A DNA stretch of 64,000 nucleotides from Dendrobates tinctorius (GCF_039654945.1 NW_027361717.1:28458001-28522000), one strand, 5' to 3'. Counted from the first letter of the stretch, positions 13,504 to 27,400 are shown. Notes: generated by a model from the sequence alone, not told the origin. Translations and numbers: made by a program.

Positions 13504-14891
13504 ATGGATCTGCGCTGGAAGAGTTTTCACTTCAACTTGGATTTGGACATCGCGATGGCTCAGGCGTATGCAGTTGCTTGCCATGAACAAAGGAAGAGAG
13601 AGAGGCAGCGAAGACGGCGGCGTATGTGGATACATCCGATTGTTGAACTCCGGGAGAGCCGTGGGGCATACCACACCCTCTACAGCGAGCTACAGGCAAA
13701 CCCGGAGAAATTTACAGATTATATCAGGATGTCCCACGAAAGTTTCATGGATTTGCTTGCTCGTGTCCAACAATCCATCCGGAGACAGGACACACAGCTC
13801 CGTCGTGCGATTCCTCCTGAGGAACGGCTACTGGTGACATTACGGTATGTTTTAAAAACCAAGGGGTGCGGTCTGATGGTTTTTTTTTAAATTTAGTATT
13901 CAAAACCGTGGGTAATTAGTTTTCGTGAATGTACTAATATTTTATTTTATAGTTTTTTAAAATAATATACATAAATATTAATTTTACTTCTTTGTCTGTT
14001 CACAGATTCCTGGCGACTGGAGAAACCCTATCTTCACTACACTTCCAGTACCGTATTGGAATCTCTACCTTGTCTGGAATTGTTGCTGACACCTGCCGGG
14101 CTCTCTGGAATGTTCTTTGCCCAGAATTTATGCCCCTGCCCACCGCTGAAAAGTGGATGGAAATTGCTGACAAATTCTGGACAATATGCAATTTTCCCAA
14201 CTGTTTGGGAGCTGTTGATGGTAAACACATACGGATCATCAAACCCCAAAGAACGGGATCTGAGTACTATAATTACAAAAAGTACTTTTCAATAGTACTC
14301 ATTGCGATTGCGGATGCCGGATGTATGTTTGTAGCAGTGGACATTGGAGCATTTGGCCGTGGTAATGACTCACAGGCTTTTAAAAACTCAGACATGGGCC
14401 GGAGGTTGTATGGCAACCAATTTAATTTCCCTATGCCACGGCCTCTTCCTCACACCGAAGCTCCGCCACTGCCCTTTGTAATGGTTGGCGATGAGGCTTT
14501 TCAAATGTGCGGAAACTTACTGAAACCCTACTCCAGCCGGGACTTGGACCACACCAAAAAAATATTTAATTACAGGCTGACCAGGGCCAGAAGAACTGTC
14601 GAGTGTGCTTTTGGGATTCTTGTCTCCAGATGGCGAATTCTGGGCACGGCCATTAATCTTAAACTTGAAACAGTCGATGAGGTGGTGAAGGCCTGTGTGG
14701 TTCTACATAACTTTGTGATGGCTAAAGAGCACCCGACCTTTGAACTGGACGATGATGCTCCTAACCCATTGCCTGAATTCACTCAGCACACTCTCAGGTC
14801 ATCCGTTGAAGTTGGCCAAATGAGGGACCAATTTGCGGCCTACTTTATTTCTGATGTAGGACGGGTGCACTGGCAAGATGAAATGGTGTAA
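13504..14891 (+). CDS. Harbinger DDE transposase (HARBI1-like), 2 exons: 13504-13844 + 14006-14891, 408 aa
   Basis: A GT-AG intron joins ..LLVTLR/FLATG.. in frame. Catalytic motifs GAVDGKHI, MVGDEAF and RRTVECAFGIL. No internal stops. TATA-like ATATATAG at ~13450, AATAAA at ~14912 and 14971. Confidence 0.95.
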
Positions 14892-15271
14892 TGTTTTTGT
14901 TTGTTTATGGTAATAAAAAACCTTATTTGATACCATTACTGAGTGCACTATATTTTTGAAACTCCAATTTAATAAAAAACTTCCCATGTATAACTGAATT
15001 TTTTGATGTTCACACACCTGGGCAGGTAAATACACATATGAGTTAAAATGCAGCATTGCTAGTCTGCGTGAAATATATTGGAACGAGCAAAGCTGCAGGC
15101 CATGAATCAGGAAACCATTTTTTTTCAAGAGAAAATTGTGCAACTAGTTGAAAACAAAGTATGTGATTTTCTCAAAACACAACCCTCAAAACCCAACCCC
15201 AATGAAAGTTCATGGGGAATACAAGTCAGCATTGAGTGGATGAATGTAATCTGCTCCATTCCAACTTACAA

Positions 15272-16395
15272 GTTATTACACTAGGCCTTTGAATGACTAT
15301 ACTAGGCCGTGGTATTTCAAATGAGTATAGTAGGCCTTGGGCCTACTAGTATAGTCATATGTGAAATACCACGGCCTAGTATAGTCATACCAAGGCCTAC
15401 TGTAATAACTCGATTTTTAACAACTAGCATCTTTTTTCACAAAAAACAAACTGGTGAAACTAGAAAGAAACTTATTTTTAAGACAAGTTTCAACAGTTTG
15501 TTTTTCATGAAACCAGATTCTAGTTGGTAAAACTAGAGTTATTACACTAGGCCTTGGAATGACTATACTAGGCCGTGGTATTTCAAATATGAGTATAGTA
15601 GGCCTTGGGCCTACTAGTATAGTCATATGTGAAATACCACGGCCTAGTATAATCATACCAAGGCCTACTGTAATAACTCGATTTTTAACAACTAGCATCT
15701 TGTTTCACAAAAAACAAACTGGTGAAACTAGAAAGAAACTTATAAGTTTCAACAGTTTGTTTTTCATGAAACCAGATTCTAGTTGGTAAAACTAGAGTTA
15801 TTACACTAGGCCTTGGAATGACTATACTAGGCCGTGGTATTTCAAATATGAGTATAGTAGGCCTTGGGCCTACTAGTATAGTCATATGTGAAATACCACG
15901 GCCTAGTATAGTCATACCAAGGCCTACTGTAATAACTCGATTTTTAACAACTAGCATCTTGTTTCACAAAAAACAAACTGGTGAAACTAGAAAGAAACTT
16001 ATAAGTTTCAACAGTTTGTTTTTCATGAAACCAGATTCTAGTTGGTAAAACTAGAGTTATTACACTAGGCCTTGGAATGACTATACTAGGCCGTGGTATT
16101 TCAAATATGAGTATAGTAGGCCTTGGGCCTACTAGTATAGTCATATGTGAAATACCACGGCCTAGTATAGTCATACCAAGGCCTACTGTAATAACTCGAT
16201 TTTTAACAACTAGCATCTTGTTTCACAAAAAACAAACTGGTGAAACTAGAAAGAAACTTATTTTTAAGACAAGTTTCAACAGTTTGTTTTTCATGAAACC
16301 AGATCCAAGTTGGTAAAACTCGAGTTATTACACTAGGCCTTGGTATGACTATACTAGTCCGTGTTATTTCACATATGACTATACTAGGCCTTGGG
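15272..16395. repeat. ~259-268 bp tandem array of two alternating palindromes inside the Harbinger element
   Basis: Units start at 15272, 15538, 15797, 16056 and 16324 (partial). Each unit is a ~140-nt and a ~120-nt imperfect inverted repeat. Confidence 0.93.
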
Positions 16396-16517
16396 TTGGT
16401 TTTTAACATGTATTTACCCATCAGTGTGTGTGAGCGGCGCAAACAACATTAATGAAACTTAGTAATGGTGAACCACAAATGTAAATTTATTTTTTATCAC
16501 AAAAATAAACCAAAAAA

Positions 16518-19500
16518 TTATTTTTTCCGGCGTTTGGGGGCAGATGGTTTCAATTTGGGGGTGTGCAGGGAATATGCAACACTTGCTGTTGAAGACGGTG
16601 TTTGAGGGGAAGGGGCAACAAAACTTGTGGGGGAAGGTAGTCCAGTTAAGGGAATCAAACTAGGAACACTTGGAGGAGAGGAAATCTGTTCAGGTACATT
16701 AGTTGTAATGGCATGTCGCCGTAGGCTTGTGTGCCTGGACCGACTTTGGCCCAATGCCCGCCTTGATGGATTTCGCCTTGAAGTAGGGGCAAATATTGAG
16801 TGTAGGTCCCCCGTCTGCAGGTGTGGCTGCTGCTGCTGCTGAGGTGGCGGCTGCTGCTGCTGAGGTGGCGGCTACTGCTGCTGAGGTGGCGGCTACTGCT
16901 GAGGTGGCGGCTGCTGCTGAGGTGGCTGCTGCTGCTGAGGTGGTTGCAGCTGCTGCTGAGGTGGTTGCAGCTGCTGCTGAGGTGGTTGCAGCTGCTGCTG
17001 AGGTGGTTGCAGCTGCTGCTGAGGTGGCTGCAGCTGCTGCTGAGGTGGCTGCTGATGAGGTGGCTGGAGCTGCTGCTGAGGTGGCTGCTGCTGCTGCTCT
17101 TCGTTGTCAGTGCTCGTCCTTGCTGGAGGACTGGTGGCGGCAGTGATGGTCCAGGTTTGCAGAGTGGTGGTGGCAGGGCTACTACACGTTGTTGTAGCGG
17201 CAGGGCTGTTCCATGTTTGCCTAGTGGTGGCTGAGCTCCACGCATGCATGGGAGTGGCGGTGGTGCTCCAGACAGGAGCAGCGCTTGCCATGGTGGTGTC
17301 GGTGAAGTGACCAGCTGCACTCAGACTTGTGGTGGTGTAACGGTGGGTGTCCTGGCTTTGAATAGAGGTGTCCGTGCAGTGGTATGCAGCACAAGTCGGT
17401 AGTGAGGTGAAGCGAGTCAATGGTGGCACAGGTGGAAAGGACACCACTGACTGCTGACCGTACCGATTATGCTGCATAGCCTGCAAGAAAGCATTGTTGC
17501 AGGCCTGCAGCACATTCAGCTGTTGATCAGGACTAAGGTGTTCCGCCATGCCCTTTTCAATCTTACTAAAAAAATGGTGTGCTGGTCTGTTGAGGTCGGC
17601 CTCCAGACGGTCAAGGCGCTGTTCTACAGAATTGAAGCGGTGTTCAAAGTGGTTAAAACCACGTTCCATGAGTGCAAAACCGCTTTCAACTCTGTCGGAC
17701 AGTGACTTGAGGCTGGAATTAAATGTCTCGCTCAAATGCATAAACTCGGGCAAGACATTCCTGTCCAAGGCCCTCTGCCGCTGGCGGGTAGTGCACGCAT
17801 AACCAGTGGCAGAGACCTGGGACAGGGGAACACCTGATGGCCCAGCTTCCTGGTCACCAGCTGTGTGTGTGGTTGACCTGCAAGGTGCTTCCTGGCTGTC
17901 GGATGGCTGGGACGGGTCAGAGGACGTCCGAGGAAGGACCGCTCCAGGGCCAGGTTGCAGGGTGCTGCTCCAGGTGCTGTTGAAGAAAGGAAAATCATTA
18001 CTACCATGCCTTTACAAGAAGCATCAGCTGTGGATTAGAAAAACACAGATTAATAAAAATAAAAACCCAAAATTTATAATACTTACGATCTCGTGGCAAG
18101 GACTGGTCTTAGGAACTGCAACGCGTTATAGTGACGGTATCTAGTTCTGGTCCTTGACGCAGATCCACTGCGAACCTGGCCCTCAGCACGAACATCACTG
18201 TTGAAGCGGTCCTTGATCGAACGCCAACGTGTTCGGACTTTGTCCACTGTTGATAAAAAAAAAACAGTGCCGTCAAGGACAACAGTCACTGCGGCACAAT
18301 GTAGCAATACAATACTCAAAGCAGTCACTGTAGACCCCGATGACACTGTTGGGTTTCCTGCTAGAATACACCTAGCATGAAACCCAACAGTGCCGTCAAG
18401 GACAACAGTCACTGCGGCACAATGTAGCAATACAATACTCAAAGCAGTCACTGTAGACCCCGATGACACTGTTGGGTTTCCTGCTAGAATACACCTAGCA
18501 CGAAACCCAACAGTGCCGTCAAGGACAACAGTCACTGCGGCACAATGTAGCAATACAATACTCAAAGCAGTCACTGTAGACCCCGATGACACTGTTGGGT
18601 TTCCTGCTAGAATACACCTAGCACGAAACCCAACAGTGCCGTCAAGGACAACAGTCACTGCGGCACAATGTAGCAATACAATACTCAAAGCAGTCACTGT
18701 AGACCCCGATGACACTGTTGGGTTTCCTGCTAGAATACACCTAGCACGAAACCCAACAGTGCCGTCAAGGACAACAGTCACTGCGGCACAATGTAGCAAT
18801 ACAATACTCAAAGCAGTCACTGTAGACCACGATGACACTGTTGGGTTTCCTGCTAGAATACACCTAGCACGAAACCCAACAGTGCCGTCAAGGACAACAG
18901 TCACTGCGGCACAATGTAGCAATACAATACTCAAAGCAGTCACTGTAGACCCCGATGACACTGTTGGGTTTCCTGCTAGAATACACCTAGCACGAAACCC
19001 AACAGTGCCGTCAAGGACAACAGTCACTGCGGCACAATACAGAGCAGGGAAATACTCACTAAACGCCTTTTTGGAGGATGCTGTGGCGCTGTCCCAGCCA
19101 TCCATCAATGCTGCGGCCACCTCATTCCATAGCCGCCGGGTCACCACAATGTCCTTGTGCAGCCGGTCACGGCTGTCCCACAACGGCGAACGCTCCTGGA
19201 CCAGGCTGATGAGCTGCTCATTATCCAGGTACACGTCTTCATCTCGTTGTGGAACCTAGACAAAACACATTCATTAGAATAATCCAATTTAAATTGAATA
19301 AAAAGTTACAAAAAAAGAAACATAAAAAAGAGTAAAAATAGAAGATAAAAAATAAAGAACATTACAAATCATTTGATACTTACATTCCGTATCACCACCG
19401 GGACTTGGCTTCGCTGCTCCTGCTCTTCGCCCTCACTAGTCCCGTCCACAGAAGAGGATGATGACGATGTCTTAAAAAAGTTGAAAAAAACGTAAGAGAT

Positions 19501-19606
19501 TTGGAGAAGCAGCAGATATACTTACCAGATGCACAAAAATAATCACCTCACGGTCTGCTTGCGCCAATTCCTGCCGCGATGGGGAATACTCTGATTCTGA
19601 AGACAT
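16518..19606 (-). CDS. Harbinger accessory MADF (Myb/SANT-like) protein with BESS-like motif and Q/P repeat; multi-exon, with premature TAGs at 16893 and 16872
   Basis: Proposed exons: 19606-~19526/19547 (donor ambiguous), 19470-19384, 19255-19060, 18246-18087, 17976-16518, all GT-AG and in phase. MADF: LISLVQERSPLWDSRD..LWNEVA..VRTRWRSIKDRF..YNALQFL. BESS-like: FFSKIEKGMAEHLSPDQQLNVLQAC. TATAAA at ~19771-19776 and AATAAA at ~16486-16491 (minus strand). Confidence 0.85.
16824..17098 (-). repeat. Coding 18-21 bp CAG-rich minisatellite (QQQLQPP)n in the MADF gene
   Basis: GCTGCTGCTGAGGTGGTTGCA-type units on the plus strand. Confidence 0.9.
18263..19040 (-). repeat. 123-bp x ~6.3 tandem array of hairpins in the intron (18247-19059) that splits the MADF domain
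   Basis: Near-identical units. Each contains a 95-nt fold-back starting at 18321, 18444, 18567, 18690, 18813 or 18936. Confidence 0.95.
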
Positions 19607-21340
19607 ACTGCATGTAAAAATAATAAAAATCATTAGTACATACATAATTTAAAAGGACAGGCATATAATGTAATATACTCACATTCTTCGCTGATATAAT
19701 GGGTTCTTGGTTGACTGTCTGCTCTTCAATCTGTCAGTGTAGTAGTGGCAGAGTTTTGGCAGGCACCTCCTTTATATAGACTTTTTTTTTTTGACTTTAG
19801 AAGATTATAACTAGGACAACAAGTGGACACCACCAAAAAAACGCAGCGCTAAAAAAACGCATACCTGCGCATGCCAGTGCGCACGTATGCGCATCCATAG
19901 GCTATAATGGCCATTTTTAGCGCAAAACGTGCGCATACGTGCGCATGCGCTTTTTTCAAGGGCCAAAAAATGCAACATGCTGCGTCTGGAAAATACCAAC
20001 GCACACCCCAAAAAAACGCAGCGCATGAAAATCGCATACATGCGCTTACCAGCGCGCAGGTATGCGCACCCATGTTAAATATAGGGGAAAAAACGCATGC
20101 GCAGGTATGCGTTTTTTTCCAGCGCTAAAAAACGCAAATGTGAAACCAGCCTAAGAACATATGTGCCCCTATTTGTGTCTGTGACAAACCCTGCTTGATG
20201 ACATGAAGGCAGAAATGGGCCCCTGTCTGGCAGCACACGTTGCACCAATGATATGTACGCCCCCAATGGGTGGGAGAAGCTTTACAGGTTTTTGTTTTTT
20301 TAGCATATGGGAAAATCACTGGACTCTGATGGATTTTCTTGCCGGTCTTGATGAAGGGGCGTGTTGGAATCAGAAGTTACTGATTCACCAAGAGGCTCCT
20401 CTTAATGATTCCGGCGCATCTGACGATTGACTTGCGCCTGCATGAACCACACCACCCATTTCCGGCAAAGAGAACGGTACAGCTCATCATGAATTAGGAA
20501 ACCTGTGGTATCATGCACCTGAAGCAGAGAGGAACTGGCAAAAAAAACCCGCAAAAAGTTGGAAAAAGTTTGCGCTATTCCAAGTTGCGACTATCAATAG
20601 CAAATTATGCCAGAATGCTGGTGAAATTATTTTTACCAATCAGGGCCACTGACCAAACACTGATGAGACTCGTTTCGTGCATTTATGTAAGAGAAAAATC
20701 CCTGATGTCTGAGGACTTTTCCTGATTTTTACTCCATCTGGACCTCATTACTGATTGCATCATAATTGTAGAAATAAAGACAAATATTCATCCATGTGTA
20801 AATAGGATTTATTTCTCATGTAGACTTCATGTGAAGGTAAAACCACAATATTAGGCTGTCTGCTTTACTGATCCATGAAAATATGCGTCTCAGTAGTGAT
20901 CAATATGGAAGTCACAAAATCAGAGCAGCTCAGTATATAAAGCATGTACCTGGAATGTGTATAACTAATAAGCACGGCACTTCGTCTAATATAATGGTGG
21001 ACTTTGCGCTATTTTCTTGACCCCAAAAAGATTGATCTGGCAAACTTGGGGCTATAAAACAATTTCTAAAATCCATACATTAGATTATTTTAGAATGATA
21101 TGTTTTCCATGCACGGTGATATAGCCGAAAATCATACATTACTTGGGGTTCTTACTAAATCAGATATAAACAATATTAAAGCCCCAGCAAATACAAAGCC
21201 TTTTTAAAAGACCATTTACCAGTTCATCTCAGAAAATTACATGTTATTAAAAAGTCATAAAACAAGAATAATCATCTTGACTGTAATTACCAACAAAGTA
21301 AAAAAAAAAAAAAACTCCAATGAAGATGTCATGTTATTCC

Positions 21341-21471: not shown

Positions 21472-24400
21472 CTGCAAACACAAGAGAATATGATAATTAG
21501 GATGAAAATTTTCATCAATCTGGGGGTCTGGATGACCAAAAAGGTTTTCACAGTAGGCCTATAGGGGTATGTGCACACGCTGAGTTTTTCAAGAGGAAGA
21601 CGCTTCACGAAACGGTGGTATTTTTTTTTTTCCTGAAGCAACTTTTTTTGTGTTTTTTTGACGTTTTCTGACGTATTAATTTTACAATAAAGATGTCGCT
21701 AGCAGTTTGAGGCAAAGACACTATTACAATTTTAAGCCTTCCCATTATCTTCTATTAGGGCTCGTGCAGATGACCGTATTATTGGTCTGAGTATGATCTG
21801 ACAAAATTTTGGATCGCACTTGGGCCACTGTCATTCTATGGGGCCGTGCACATGTTGATTTTTTCCTCGGACAGTACTGGTCCGAGGAAAAAAAAAAAAT
21901 CGCTGCATGCATTCAATAGTCAGATTGCAAATATACTATACTCGGATTGCCAACAATTCGAAAGTAATGCCACCACTTTATTAGATCAGCAACCTCTTTC
22001 TTCAAGATCCTTAGGACTAAAAAATAAAGTAAAAAATAATTTAAAAAGTATTTTACAAAGTTTAAAAATATAAAAAAAAGTTGGTTGAAATCAATGCCTT
22101 TTCCAAAAAATAAAAATATAAAAAAAGCAAACAAACAACATACAGTATTTGATGCCGCAACATGTGTAAAAGTCTGTATTACTAAAATATAAAAATTAAC
22201 CAAAACCGCAAACCACGTAAAGAAAAAAGAACTTAGAATACTTTCACACAGCTCTATCTACACAAAAGAAAAATTGCTATAAGTTTCTGAACTCGGCGAC
22301 ACAAACCAATTGTTTGTTACAGAGCCATGAGGGTTTTTTTTCCCTAAAATAACTAAATATGTGATACAATTTTTTGTACATTTTTTTTTCCTCTTAATTG
22401 CAAGCAGATGAGTGAGGGTCCAAATGCTAAGCCCAGTGGCGTATCGCCAATGGCAGCAGGCCATGTGGCTGCTATAGGGCACGTGAGTCGGGTAAGACCG
22501 GTATAGCGCCAGCCCCATCTGCCATAGCACGTTCCACTGTATCGGCATCCTGGATGCAAATACAGTTGATAGCAATGATGGAGGAGGAAGCATCAGCTGA
22601 CACTTCCTCCTCCGTCATTCTTCCTCAGCACCTGACGTCACTGCACAGTGCCCACTGCATTGAGATGTCCAGTGCTTCAGAATGCACATTCCCATGCAAG
22701 AACGAACGCACACAGGGGAAAGAGGAGGATAGGTAAGTATTTGTTTTCAATTATAATCAGTGAGTACATTGTGGTGGCCATAATACTGTATGGAGGACTA
22801 TCAGGAGTGCATTATACTATATGTAGAACTAGGAGGAGTGCATCATACTATATGAACTATGGGAAGTGCATTATATTATAGGGAGGACTATGGGGAGTGC
22901 ATTTTACTATATGGAGGACTATTGGGAGCGCATTATATTATATGGAGAACTATGGGGATTGCATTATACTATATAAAGTACTATGGGGAGTGCTTTATAT
23001 TATACAGTATGGAGGGCCATGGGGATTGCATTAAACTGCATGGAGGATTATGGGGAGTGTATTATAATGTATGGAGGACTATGGAGTGCACTATACTATA
23101 TGGAGGACTATGGGGGCGCATTATACTATATTGAAGACTATGGGAGTGCATTATACTATATAGAGGACTATGGGGAGTGCATTATACTATATGGAGGACT
23201 ATGGGGTGTAATATACTATATGGAGGATTATGGGGTGCAGTATACTATATAGAGGACTATGTGGAGGCCACTATAATATTTTAAGGGCTATGTGGGGGCC
23301 ATTATAATATTTGAAGCGCTATGTGGGAGCCTTTATACTTTATGCAGGGCTATGTGGGGGCAATTAAGCTATATGCAAGCAATTATACAGTTTGAAGGCT
23401 TGTGTGGGGTCCATCATACTGTGTGGAGGCTCTTCTACTGTTTGGAGGCTACTGGGGGCCGTTATAGAGTGTGGTATGTTGTGGAGTAATTATACTATTT
23501 GCAGGTCCATTACACTGCATGGAGTGCTTTGTGGGGGTCATAGTTGGGGATCATACTCTGTTGGGTCACCATACTTTGTCAGGGGAGTTGAAGAGGGGTA
23601 TAGTAGGTTTGTCACAGGGTACTGTGGAGGAATTCGCTGTGAGGTATCATACAGTTTTAGTGTGGCACCTTTGTTGACATCATATGTTATAGGTGCAAGG
23701 AAAGGGAAATCTAGGGCTTCAGTCGGAGGAAAATTACTTTGTAACGGCTGCAAAGTTGTGAGATATGCTTTTCTGTGACCCATATGAATATTTTTTTTTT
23801 TGTTGGAGGGGGGCCCAATGATTTCTTTGAAATGTCCATGGCTGAGCCCTTAGTGATAGCTCAAAAAAGGAGATTTTTGTGTACTCACCGTAAAATCTCT
23901 TTCTCTTAGCCTTTTAATTGGGGGACACAGAACCGTGGGTGTTATGCTGCTGTCCACTAGGAGGCGACACTATGCATAATCTGAAAAAGATTAACTTTGG
24001 CTCCTCCTCTGCAGTATACACCCCTGGACGGCATCAGCCTTCTCCAGTTTTGTGCAAAAGCATTAGGAGGAATATACCAAAAACATAACCATGCCTGTAA
24101 AAAAAGGCTACTATAAACAGGCTCAAACAACAATATGAGAACCCAACCGTAACAACGGCCCGCAAGGGCAACAGGGTGGGAGCTGTGTCCCCCAATTAAA
24201 AGGCTAAGAGAAAGAGATTTTACGGTGAGTACACAAAAATCTCCTTTACTCTGTCGCCTTATTGGGGGACACAGAACCGTGGGACGTCCCAAAGCAGTCC
24301 CTGGGTGGGAAGCAGTGGACGAATATTGTGCTGACAGTCCCCTAGACTTGGGGTACTGCCGCCTGCAGGACCCGTCTACCCAGGCTCGCATCCGCTGAGG

Positions 24401-27400
24401 ACTGGGTATGTGTTTTGTAAATGTGTGCAGGCTAGTCCAAGTGGCTGCCTTACACACTTGATGTGCCGAGGCTTGATGCCGAATGGCCCAAGAGGCCCCT
24501 ACCGCCCGCGTAGAGTGTGCCGTGATACCGGCCTGAAGGGGAGAACTGTTGAGGCGGTAAGCCTCTTGAATGGTGGACTTGATCCACCTAGCAAGGGTGG
24601 TTTTGGAAGCCGGTAGGCCCTTGCGAACGCCTTCTGGAAGAAGGAAAAGTGAATCAGACTTCCGGAAGGGAGCAGTCCTAGACACGTAAATACGCAATGC
24701 CCTGACAAGGTCAAGCGTATGCAGAGCCTTCTCTACCCTATGAACGGGAGCCGGGCAAAGAGACGGTAGTGATATTTCCTCATTGAGGTGGAAGCTAGAC
24801 ACGACCTTCGGAAGGAAGGATGGTACTGTACGGAAAACCACCTTGTCCTGATGAAAAACCAGGAAGGGTTGTCTGCAGGACAGAGCTGAAAGTTCAGACA
24901 CCCTGCGTAGCGAGGTGATTGCCACCAGGAAAACCACTTTCTGTGATAGAAAGCGGCGTGAGACCTCCTTAAGGGGTTCAAAAGGAGGTGACTGTAGTGC
25001 TGTCAAGACCAGGTTGAGGTCCCACGTCTCCAACGGACGTTTGTAGGGGGGAACCAATCGGGAAACCCCTTGGAGAAAAGTCTTCACTTGCGGCTTGTTA
25101 GCAATACGCCTCTGAAAGAGCACTGAAAGCGCTGACACCTGGCTCTTCAGCGAGCCCAGGGATAGCCTGGCGTCCAGGCCTGACTGAAGGAAACCGAGGA
25201 CCTTTGGATGAGAATAGGGAAGTGGAATCTGCCCACGAGAGTCGCACCATGTGAAGAAAACCTTCCAGGTACGATAGTAAATCCTGGCTGAAGTTGGCTT
25301 TCGAGCCCTGATCATGGTTTTAACAACGTCTGGTGAAAAACCTGCTTGGGTCAAAACCCAGGTCTCAATTGCCACGCCGTCAAATTGAGAGCCCCTGAGT
25401 TCTAGTGGAAGAATGGGCCTTGTGACAGGAGGTCGGGACGTGTGGGGAGACGCCAGGGAGCGTCTGCTGTGAGTTGCACGACGTCGGCGTACCATGTACG
25501 CCTGGGCCAGTCTGGAGCGATCAGAATGGTGGGAACACCCTCTTGTTTGATCTTCCTCAGGACTCTGGAGATCAGGGGGAGGGGTGGAAAAATGTACAGA
25601 AGCTGGAACTGGGTCCAGTCCTGAACCAGGGCATCTGCTCCGAGCGACCGCGGATCGCGCGGCCTGGCCATGAAATTGGGAACCTTGGCATGGAGATGGG
25701 ATGCCATCAGATCCACGTCCGGGGTCCCCCAACGATGACAGATCTGACAGAAGACTTCGGGATGGAGAGACCATTCCCCTGAGTCCATTCCTTGTCGGCT
25801 GAGATAGTCAGCTTCCCAGTTGTCCACACCCGGAATGTGGACAGCGGAGAGTACCGACCTTGCAGCCTCCGCCCATTGTAGGATACGCGTTACTTCGGTC
25901 ATCGCCTGGATGCTGCGGGTGCCGCCTTGATGGTTCACGTATGCCACTGCCGTGGCATTGTCAGACTGTACTCTGATATGAGAGTCTGCCAGCAAGTGAT
26001 GGAAGGCTTTCAACGCCAGGAAGATGGCCCGAATTTCCAGGATGTTGATGGGCATGGTCGATTCCCTTGGTGACCACCTGCCTTGCGCTCTGTGATGTAG
26101 GTGCACCGCGCCCCAACCCATAAGGCTTGCGTCGGTGGTCAACACCTTCCATTGACCGGAGAGAAAGGATTTTCCCCTTGCAAGCGAGGTTGGCTTGAGC
26201 CACCAGTGCAGGGACCTCCTGGTGTTTGCTGATAACCGGAACTCCCTGTCGAGGGAGAACGGATTCCTGTCCCAGGACTTGAGGATGGCCAGTTGAAGGG
26301 GTCTGAGGTGAAGCTGGGCAAATGGTACCGCCTACATTGCTGCTGCCATCCTGCCAAGTACTCTCATGGCATACCGGAGAGATCTGGGGGGACTTGCGGA
26401 GGAGTGTGTGAACTCCCAGACGGAGAGCCAGTGCCTTGTCCCTGGGGAGGATCACCAGACCCTTGGAGGTGTCGAATAGCATCCCCAGGAAGGTCAGAGA
26501 CTGACTCGGGGTAGTCGAGGACTTCTGTGAATTGACTAACCATCCCAGGCGCGTCAGTGTCGATCGTGATCGAGACGTTGACCTCGCAGTCCTTGAGGGT
26601 GGGGCCCTTGATGAGAAGGTCGTCCAGGTATGGAACGACTACTATGCCTCTGGAGTGCAGAACGTCCATGGTAGCCGCCATGACCTTTGTAAATGTTCTG
26701 GGAGCCGTGGCGAGACCGAACGGGAGGGCCACAAACTGGTAATGGTCTTGGTTGATTGCGAATCTGAGAAACCTCTGATGGGCGGGAGCAATCGGTATAT
26801 GCAGGTATGCGTCCTGTATGTCTATGGAGGCAAGATATTCTCCTTTTTCCATAGACGCAACGATTGACCGGAGGGATTCCATGCGGAAGTGACGAACTCG
26901 AACGTACTTGTTGAGTTGCTTGAGGTCTAGTATGGGTCGGACGCTGCCTCCCTTCTTGGGCACCACAAAGAGGTTGGAATAGAACCCTCGGAAGCGCTCT
27001 TCTGCTGGGACTGGCACTATGACTCCTGCTCGCAGGAGGGAAGAAACCGCTTGACGGAAGGCCTGAGCTTTGAGCGGGGATTTTGGAGGGACAGAGGGAA
27101 AAAACCTGTGCGGTGGGCTGGTAGTAAACTCGATTTTGTATCCTGAAGACACTATTTCCTTGACCCACTTGTCTTCTGTAATAGGCAGCCAGACCTGCTG
27201 AAAGAGTAGCAGTCGTCCGCCTACAAGTGGGGTGTCTTCCAGAGGGGCATGAGTCAGGATGAGGGAAAAGTCTGAGGTTTTCCTCCTTTAGGTTTTGCCT
27301 GGCTTGCCTTTGATTGCCAGTCCTGTCCGGCCTCTGTGCCGCACGTGTGTTGTCCCTGCGGGGGGAACGATTACAGTTTTGTGCTGGGCGTGAGACGGAC

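What the first reader, a model, noticed from the sequence alone, without database searches (positions are those of the whole stretch)
18247..19059. A DNA transposon carrying a six-copy pri-miRNA-like hairpin cluster in the intron that splits its MADF domain
Seen: each 123-bp unit contains a 95-nt fold-back, with 28-nt spacers between them. On the transcribed (minus) strand it reads GCAGUGACUGUUGU-CCUU-GACGG-CACUGUUGGGUUUC-G-UGCUAG[GUGUAUU]CUAGCA-G-GAAACCCAACAGUG-UCAUC-GGGG-UCUACAGUGACUGC. That is a ~44-position stem with only single-base mismatches and a 7-nt loop starting GUGU. Three positions are G:U on this strand (A:C on the other), against one in the opposite direction. Known: Microprocessor favours ~35-bp imperfect stems with an apical UGU/GUG, intronic polycistronic miRNA clusters are common, and TE-derived intronic small RNAs have been reported in Xenopus. 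Inference: an autonomous Harbinger may co-express its own small-RNA cassette with its DNA-binding protein, for self-regulation or to act on the host. Candidate arms are ~GGCACUGUUGGGUUUCGUGCUAG and ~UAGCAGGAAACCCAACAGUGUC. I do not recognise them as a known miRNA. The strand asymmetry is modest, and the basal pairing partly comes from a self-palindromic CAGTCACTG motif.
Basis: partly seen in the sequence, partly recalled or inferred. Interest (0 to 1): 0.82.

Follow-up and report, generated by a model that had tools for sequence, protein, structure and literature searches.

The report
Amplified conserved hairpin in transposon intron
A poison-frog Harbinger jumping gene has one intron filled by six tandem copies of a 123-base hairpin unit; related transposons keep the pairing of this hairpin while its letters drift, but nothing shows that it makes microRNAs.

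Summary
The element at 13178-20151 is a Harbinger with TAA target duplications. The 813-nt stretch 18247-19059 is a real, spliced intron that splits the MADF domain. It is filled by a 123-bp x 6.3 array with six 95-nt hairpins. The genome is Dendrobates tinctorius, not Xenopus.

The array is not private. A second copy (L001) has the same 776-bp array. Sister subfamilies in D. tinctorius and Ranitomeya imitator carry 1, 2-3 or 4 homologous units in the same intron. Outgroup elements (Anomaloglossus, Bufo) have a plain ~87-nt intron.

Across subfamilies 18 of 27 stem pairs changed on both sides and 94% of cells stay paired. Arm sequence is only 45-66% identical. So the pairing is kept, not any would-be mature microRNA.

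No Rfam family matches. There is no complementarity to the rest of the element. G:U strand bias is weak. RNA depth over the array resembles other introns. Small RNAs could not be tested.

My best reading is a self-maintaining palindromic minisatellite inside the transposon. An RNA hairpin kept by selection is the main rival.

This scan met the same kind of array on three other copies of this genome (s1-386048, s1-376857, s1-389123).

The parts
13178..20151 (.). Harbinger element, 6974 bp. TIRs are GGCTAGTTTCACA... and ...TGTGAAACCAGCC. TAA target-site duplications lie at 13175-13177 and 20152-20154.
   Evidence: A second full copy, L001, is 95-96% identical over the whole span.
13486..14891 (+). 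Transposase gene. Exon 1 is about 13486-13850 and exon 2 is 13992-14891. The DDE_Tnp_4 domain is complete.
   Evidence: Pfam E = 5.6e-27, profile 1-158/158. It is 96-99% identical to an annotated D. tinctorius protein, P0001.
19060..19253 (-). MADF gene exon that encodes the first half of the MADF domain.
   Evidence: Pfam PF10545 profile 1-37. Splice joints 19253|19382 and 18246|19060.
18247..19059 (-). Intron of 813 nt (GT..AG) that splits the MADF domain. It is open in frame with the exons, which gives a 383-aa read-through ORF.
   Evidence: Joint 'skips 813, CT..AC' in X5. Matching loose ends in X15. Absent from DNA run X1. ORF.
18263..19038 (-). Tandem array of 123 bp x 6.3. Each unit is a 95-nt hairpin plus a 28-nt spacer. 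The spacer is a decayed copy of the intron's 5' leader, including a dead 5' splice site (TTGAGT).
18936..19030 (-). Hairpin 1, first in the sense direction.
18813..18907 (-). Hairpin 2, a variant with CGTGG that loses one G:U pair.
18690..18784 (-). Hairpin 3.
18567..18661 (-). Hairpin 4.
18444..18538 (-). Hairpin 5.
18321..18415 (-). Hairpin 6, a variant with A at the G.G mismatch position.
18263..18292 (-). Partial seventh unit: 30 nt of a 5' arm, directly before the polypyrimidine tract and the 3' splice site.
18087..18246 (-). MADF gene exon that encodes the second half of the MADF domain.
   Evidence: Pfam PF10545 profile 44-84. Joint 17976|18087.
16893..17976 (-). Downstream part of the MADF gene. 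It includes a 21-bp x 13.9 coding repeat at 16823-17098. The exon structure here was not fully resolved.

Best explanation
The array is a palindromic minisatellite inside the transposon, derived from an older single hairpin. A palindromic unit of about 70-95 nt entered this MADF-gene intron in the ancestor of one dendrobatid Harbinger clade. The segment 'intron leader + hairpin' was then duplicated head to tail. Slippage or unequal exchange changed the copy number: 1, 2-3, 4 and 6.3 units in the copies I read, and 8 and 12 reported by other notes. The array is transcribed only as part of the MADF pre-mRNA and is removed by splicing, so it does no harm to the protein. The two arms stay complementary while their sequence drifts at about the neutral rate. 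I infer that this comes mainly from arm-to-arm copying in DNA, that is template switching or intrastrand conversion at a palindrome, and not from selection for a sequence-specific small RNA. Shown here: the anatomy, the splicing, the spread within the family, the single origin and the compensated stem changes. Inferred: the DNA-level mechanism of maintenance and the lack of a small-RNA function.
For: Array and hairpins. The intron is spliced out in RNA contigs. The same 776-bp array is in L001. Homologous units occur in L019 (2 plus 1 degenerate), L018 (4), L003 (1), L004/L020 (1) and L022 (1). Anomaloglossus and Bufo have no hairpin. The hairpin-bearing elements form a clade with 100/100 support. 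The spacer is a decayed leader in both W and L018. Arm identity is 45-66% against 64-83% for the exons, yet 94% of cells are paired and 18 of 27 pairs changed on both sides. Several of these changes are adjacent (pairs 34-36), as multi-base template switches would give (mechanism in PMC8794818). Units within arrays decay without visible constraint: L018 u2 folds at -54 against -70.5 kcal/mol, and L019 u3 at -24.7. The same element carries a second palindromic array at 15271-16395. A distant subfamily has an unrelated 125-nt palindrome in the same intron, so palindromes arise readily in these elements. Contig depth over the array in RNA-type runs, divided by six units, is about that of the neighbouring introns. 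No Rfam match. No complementarity to the rest of the element. Tandem repeats inside DNA transposons and MITEs are known (PMC4079207, PMC3879986).
Against: Covariation this strong is the usual signature of a selected RNA stem: 0 of 500 shuffles reach it, and slid controls give 4-7 pairs and 32-48% paired. The sense strand folds better in four or five lineages against two. G:U pairs outnumber A.C by about 12-15 to 6 on the sense strand. That is a weak trend in the direction RNA selection predicts. Frequent arm-to-arm conversion of 40-bp palindromes in vertebrates is assumed here, not demonstrated. The hairpin has persisted in every sampled member of the clade since before the Dendrobates-Ranitomeya element split.
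Confidence: 0.5

Rival explanations
1. The hairpin is an RNA structure kept by selection acting on the transposon, for its shape and not its sequence. It might loop out most of the intron so that the splice sites stay close and the decayed internal 5' splice sites are hidden. It might instead serve as a Dicer or Drosha substrate whose products act on the family's own transcripts. Tandem amplification would then multiply that unit.
For: 18 of 27 pairs have changes on both sides and 94% of cells are paired across subfamilies whose arms are only 45-66% identical. The hairpin is present in every sampled member of a 100/100 clade in two frog genera. The sense strand is the more stable one in most lineages, and G:U exceeds A.C on the sense strand. 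The unit was amplified in more than one subfamily. Each spacer holds a decayed 5' splice site that the fold would leave between compact hairpins.
Against: Every piece of this evidence fits a DNA palindrome equally well. The G:U bias is not significant, at about 12:6 independent events. It is also expected from transcription-linked mutation asymmetry (my own knowledge). Two lineages, L003 and L004, fold better on the antisense strand. Outgroup elements splice a plain ~87-nt intron without any hairpin. Units inside arrays decay. RNA contig depth shows no excess over the array. A transposon that feeds Dicer with its own hairpin would invite silencing.
Confidence: 0.3
2. This is a true polycistronic microRNA cluster. 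Microprocessor would crop each hairpin from the intron and Dicer would release about 22-nt RNAs with defined seeds. These would regulate the transposon or host genes.
For: There are six regular imperfect hairpins on the transcribed strand in a spliced intron. The loop contains GUGU. Tandem hairpin arrays are an architecture used by real microRNA clusters, and palindromic MITEs have given rise to microRNAs such as mir-548 from Made1 (PMC1784062).
Against: The candidate mature arms are not conserved. Type I units (L018, L003, L004, L022) and type II units (window, L019) differ at most positions of the upper stem. The stem has 40 pairs over 44 positions with a 5-7-nt loop and can re-pair across the spacer. 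No Rfam microRNA family comes near threshold: the best is 43 bits against a gathering score of 200. No complementarity to the element beyond a 10-nt chance match. No small-RNA data.
Confidence: 0.06
3. The unit is a nested foreign element, a short foldback or MITE that inserted into the intron and was later amplified. Its arms would be terminal inverted repeats kept for its own mobility.
For: The unit is a near-perfect palindrome flanked by short direct CAGTG motifs. A distant subfamily (L021) has an unrelated 125-nt palindrome beginning with CAGTG at the same place. Small palindromic MITEs are common in frog genomes (my own knowledge).
Against: In DNA run X1 the summed depth over the array is no more than expected from the exons times the array length (a crude measure). 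No clear target-site duplication was found. A nested dead MITE would not keep its arms paired through 18 double changes.
Confidence: 0.1

Closest known systems
Tandem-repeat arrays inside DNA transposons and MITEs (Tetris foldback element of Drosophila virilis, PMC4079207; DTC84 MITE of the clam Donax trunculus, PMC3879986)
   Same: Short head-to-tail arrays lie inside a mobile element. Copy number varies between copies. Units are homogenised within an array. The array travels with the element.
   Different: Here the array sits inside a spliced intron of the element's own DNA-binding-protein gene. Each unit is itself a long hairpin. The hairpin is older than the array and keeps its pairing across subfamilies.
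MicroRNAs born from palindromic MITEs (hsa-mir-548 from Made1, PMC1784062; plant MITE-derived microRNAs, PMC9641971)
   Same: A near-perfect TE palindrome, transcribed within a host transcript, gives a hairpin of pre-microRNA size.
   Different: Those cases rest on sequenced mature small RNAs. Here none has been seen, the arm sequence is not conserved, and the hairpin lies inside an autonomous-looking element and is not a dispersed MITE.
Stems created and kept by replication template switching (Monttinen and Loytynoja 2022, PMC8794818)
   Same: Reverse-complement copying can make a perfect stem in one event and can repair pairing with multi-base 'compensatory' changes. This matches the adjacent double changes seen here.
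   Different: That work dealt with functional RNA genes. Applying it to a transposon intron is my inference and was not tested by ancestral reconstruction.
Xenopus siteRNAs (PMC3875865)
   Same: Small RNAs linked to transposon sequence in frog introns.
   Different: siteRNAs are 23-29 nt and 85% of their clusters are antisense to TE remnants in host-gene introns. They are not hairpin-derived and they come from a different frog.

Membership tests
PIF/Harbinger DNA transposon | DDE_Tnp_4 transposase | tested here: met
   Pfam PF13359, E = 5.6e-27, full profile. 4036 homologues, the closest being annotated D. tinctorius proteins.
PIF/Harbinger DNA transposon | Second gene for a Myb/SANT/MADF-type DNA-binding protein | tested here: met
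   The two exons match PF10545 positions 1-37 and 44-84. The gene is spliced in RNA contigs.
PIF/Harbinger DNA transposon | Terminal inverted repeats with a 3-bp TAA/TTA target-site duplication | tested here: met
   TIRs at 13178 and 20151, with TAA on both sides. A deletion derivative at about 1461-2796 shares both ends.
Canonical animal microRNA cluster | Hairpin with a stem of about 35 bp, single-stranded flanks and an apical loop of about 10 nt or more | tested here: inconclusive
   The stem has 40 pairs over 44 positions and the loop is 5-7 nt. The 28-nt spacers are unpaired in the centroid structure but can pair across units. The reference values are from my own knowledge.
Canonical animal microRNA cluster | Discrete ~22-nt reads with fixed 5' ends and a 2-nt 3' overhang duplex | not testable with these tools
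   All available runs are Logan contigs built from 31-letter words. No raw small-RNA run was offered.
Canonical animal microRNA cluster | Mature or seed sequence conserved among homologous hairpins | tested here: not met
   Arm identity is 59-66% (window vs L018) and 45% (window vs L004), while the MADF exons are 77% and 70% identical.
Canonical animal microRNA cluster | Match to a described microRNA family | tested here: not met
   Rfam 15 gives nothing at gathering score in the window or in L018, L004 and L022. The best sub-threshold hit is 43 bits against 200.
Mirtron | Hairpin ends coincide with the splice sites | tested here: not met
   A 29-nt leader lies before the first hairpin. Six hairpins and a partial unit lie before the 3' splice site.
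TE-internal tandem repeat (minisatellite) | Head-to-tail units of high identity inside the element, with copy number varying among copies | tested here: met
   6.3 units at 99% identity. 6.3 units in L001, 2-3 in L019, 4 in L018, and 1 in L003, L004 and L022.
Structured RNA under selection | Covariation that keeps pairs through changes on both sides | tested here: met
   18 of 27 pairs, 93.8% of cells paired, 0 of 500 shuffles, slid controls 4-7 pairs. This does not separate RNA selection from DNA palindrome maintenance.
Structured RNA under selection | Strand-specific signal: G:U tolerated on the transcribed strand only | tested here: inconclusive
   Sense G:U against A.C is 4:1, 2:1, 2:0, 4:0, 1:2, 1:2 and 1:0 in seven hairpins. 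The sense fold is better in 4-5 lineages and the antisense fold in 2.
Nested MITE | Dispersed stand-alone copies with target-site duplications | tested here: inconclusive
   None found in about 0.5 Mb of fetched frog sequence. No excess DNA depth over the array. No whole-genome search was possible.

The most novel reading that the evidence does not exclude
A clade of vertebrate Harbinger transposons carries, within the intron of its own DNA-binding-protein gene, an RNA hairpin kept by selection and repeatedly multiplied in tandem. Drosha or Dicer processes it into small RNAs that tune the element's own activity or blunt host silencing. That would make it a transposon-encoded small-RNA cassette.
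Probability: 0.15. Interest if true: 0.8.

Novelty: new variant of a known kind. Interest (0 to 1): 0.42.

Why it matters
Tandem repeats inside transposons are common and usually meaningless. Here the repeated unit is a hairpin that has sat in the same intron of the same transposon gene since before the Dendrobates and Ranitomeya elements diverged, and its stem has been rewritten on both arms without losing pairing.

If RNA-level selection keeps the pairing, this would be a rare structured non-coding RNA encoded by a vertebrate DNA transposon, and a possible route from transposon to microRNA cluster caught midway.

If DNA-level arm copying keeps it, this is a clean natural example of how strong 'covariation' can arise without RNA function. 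That is a caution for structure-prediction screens of repeat-rich genomes.

The in-frame, stop-free intron also explains why ORF-based gene callers will report a false 383-aa protein here.

Tried and rejected
- **Rfam:** permissive and gathering thresholds gave only sub-threshold chance hits.
- **Complementarity to the rest of the element:** the longest exact match with the unit is 10 nt, which is the chance level in 100 shuffles. A self-targeting small RNA with extended pairing is therefore not supported.
- **Coding reading of the array:** the intron is open in frame. However, 2 of 6 frames are open, which is near the chance expectation, and the L018 unit is about 125 nt, not a multiple of three. 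Rejected.
- **Mirtron:** rejected because the hairpins do not abut the splice sites.
- **Alternative 5' splice sites in the spacers:** rejected because the internal copies read TTGAGT or CTAATT.
- **A misreading I corrected:** I first read the loose ends at 18262 and 19039 as evidence that other copies have an unrelated intron filling. Compared with L019, they are diverged units of the sister subfamily that fell below the 90% likeness cut.
- **The search of earlier findings by sequence:** blank.
- **L002:** an 88% transposase relative with no MADF gene, so it gave no information.
- **P0002:** no DNA was returned because the annotated gene range was too long.

Full report
**What is there**

Tandem Repeats Finder reports a 123-bp unit repeated 6.3 times at 18263-19038 with 99% matches. 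Each unit holds two 44-nt arms that are 82% complementary and separated by 7 nt.

Folding the whole 813-nt stretch gives six 95-nt hairpins in both the minimum-energy and the centroid structures, on either strand. The energy is -448.5 kcal/mol on the minus strand and -365.3 on the plus strand. Both lie far beyond shuffled controls.

Each stem has 40 pairs over 44 positions with single-base mismatches and a 5-7-nt loop. A 123-nt piece cut in another register folds across the spacer instead. The L019 and L001 arrays use that register in part.

**Context**

- On the minus strand, GTGAGT starts at 19059 and CAG ends at 18247.
- The exon before it matches Pfam MADF positions 1-37 and the exon after it matches positions 44-84.
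- In Logan contigs of public runs, the joint 18246|19060 (skips 813, GT..AG on the minus strand) is present in run X5. It also appears as matching loose ends in X15, and it is absent from DNA run X1.
- Two neighbouring introns of the same gene are spliced too.

The gene lies in a 6974-bp Harbinger at 13178-20151, with TIRs and TAA duplications. The element also has a two-exon DDE_Tnp_4 transposase on the other strand.

The transposase is 99% identical to annotated proteins of Dendrobates tinctorius. The genome is therefore a poison frog, not Xenopus.

**Is the array private to this copy?**

No.
- L001, on another scaffold of the same assembly, is 95-96% identical over the whole element and carries the same 776-bp array.
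- Array words are deep in the DNA run, roughly in proportion to the exons times the array length (a crude measure).
- A second organism (run X17) has a contig that spans the array edge, the donor site and the exon.
- Notes from this scan report 6, 8 and 12 units in three other copies. I did not see those sequences.

**Older history**

I fetched relatives through transposase homologues and found the same intron, at the same position, in all of them.

| Locus | Species | Content of the homologous intron |
|---|---|---|
| L005-L014 | Anomaloglossus baeobatrachus | about 87 nt, no hairpin |
| L015-L017 | Bufo gargarizans | about 87 nt, no hairpin |
| L003 | D. tinctorius | one hairpin unit |
| L018 | D. 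tinctorius | four tandem units of about 125 nt |
| L019 | D. tinctorius | two units, an ~830-bp insertion, and a third decayed unit |
| L004/L020, L022 | Ranitomeya imitator | one hairpin each |
| L021 | D. tinctorius | an unrelated 125-nt palindrome at the same place |

- On a transposase tree, the hairpin-bearing elements form a clade with 100/100 support. L021 groups with the hairpin-less Anomaloglossus element.
- The units align over their whole length at 66-70% mean column identity. They share a base GCAGTGAC and an apex GCTAG...CTAGC.
- In both the window array and the L018 array, the spacer is a decayed copy of the intron's 5' leader with a dead splice donor. The duplicated segment was therefore 'leader plus hairpin'.

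**Covariation**

RNAalifold predicts a 27-pair consensus stem.
- In the 14-row alignment that includes L022, 18 pairs have changes on both sides and 93.8% of cells are paired.
- None of 500 column shuffles reaches these values.
- Sliding the partner by 1-3 columns gives 4-7 pairs and 32-48% paired.
- A first alignment gave 15 of 27 pairs.
- Arm sequences are only 59-66% identical (window vs L018) and 45% identical (window vs L004). The MADF exons of the same pairs are 77% and 70% identical.

Pairing is kept and sequence is not.

**What this does and does not show**

Covariation cannot tell an RNA stem from a DNA palindrome, because both strands of a palindrome pair equally. The only strand-specific signal available is G:U against A.C.
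- The seven hairpins give 4:1, 2:1, 2:0, 4:0, 1:2, 1:2 and 1:0. This is about 12 independent sense events against 6.
- The sense strand folds better in four or five lineages and the antisense strand in two.

That is a trend, not a result. Transcription-linked mutation asymmetry would push it the same way (my own knowledge).

Replication template switching can create perfect stems and repair them with multi-base changes (PMC8794818). Three adjacent pairs (34-36) changed together here.

Other observations point towards a neutral palindrome:
- Units inside arrays decay without visible constraint (L018 u2, L019 u3).
- The same element holds a second palindromic array at 15271-16395.

**The microRNA claim**

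Against it:
- The would-be mature arms differ between subfamilies.
- The stem is longer and the loop smaller than typical Microprocessor substrates (my own knowledge).
- Rfam gives nothing at the gathering score in the window or in three related loci. The best hit at a permissive threshold is 43 bits against a cut-off of 200.
- The unit shares no more than a chance 10-nt match with the rest of the element.
- In RNA-type runs, contig depth over the array divided by six units is about that of the neighbouring introns.

For it, there is only the architecture, and the precedent of MITE palindromes that became microRNAs (PMC1784062).

Small RNAs could not be examined. All runs offered were contigs built from 31-letter words.

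**Verdict**

The transposon and intron context is confirmed, apart from the species.

The best-supported reading is an old palindromic unit in a transposon intron that has been amplified in tandem, whose arms are kept complementary mainly by DNA-level copying (confidence 0.5). An RNA hairpin kept by selection for its shape is a serious rival (0.3). A true microRNA cluster is unlikely (0.06).

The scan had already met this kind of array on three other copies of this genome. Two follow-ups called it an ordinary minisatellite. One called it a conserved hairpin with compensating mutations. My tests reproduce the compensating changes and show why they do not settle the function.

Noticed in passing
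window 15271-16395: A second palindromic tandem array (259 bp x 4.3, 96% matches, nested inverted repeats 81-92% complementary) lies between the convergent transposase and MADF genes. It is also present in L001.
   Followed up: partly
window 1461-2796: A deletion derivative of about 1.3 kb shares both ends of this Harbinger (93-95% identical to 13167-13347 and 19835-20156). It is flanked by TAA and TTA. Another first-reader note says it encloses a telomere-like array.
   Followed up: partly
window 16823-17098: A 21-bp x 13.9 repeat lies inside the downstream coding part of the MADF gene and gives a Q/P-rich peptide repeat. L001 has a shorter, diverged version.
   Followed up: no
window 18083-19234 (minus strand): The 813-nt intron is a multiple of three and has no stop in frame. 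The unspliced reading is a 383-aa ORF with 271 residues of translated repeat inside the MADF domain. ORF-based gene callers would report it as a protein.
   Followed up: yes
L021:17354-17478: A D. tinctorius Harbinger of a distant subfamily (transposase 69% identical) has an unrelated, near-perfect 125-nt palindrome (53 Watson-Crick + 3 G:U pairs) in the homologous MADF intron. This is a second, independent palindrome at the same spot.
   Followed up: partly
L019:19140-19980: An insertion of about 830 bp of unrelated sequence splits the hairpin array of this older copy between its second and third units.
   Followed up: no
L001:14742-15451 versus window 18321-19030: The units are homogenised within each array. 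Most L001 units share GGCG in the loop and CGTGG in the stem, while most window units share GGTG and CGGGG. One unit of each array carries the other array's variant. This is concerted evolution within arrays.
   Followed up: partly
window 23957-25774 (minus strand): A 605-aa ORF lies downstream of the Harbinger. It was not examined.
   Followed up: no
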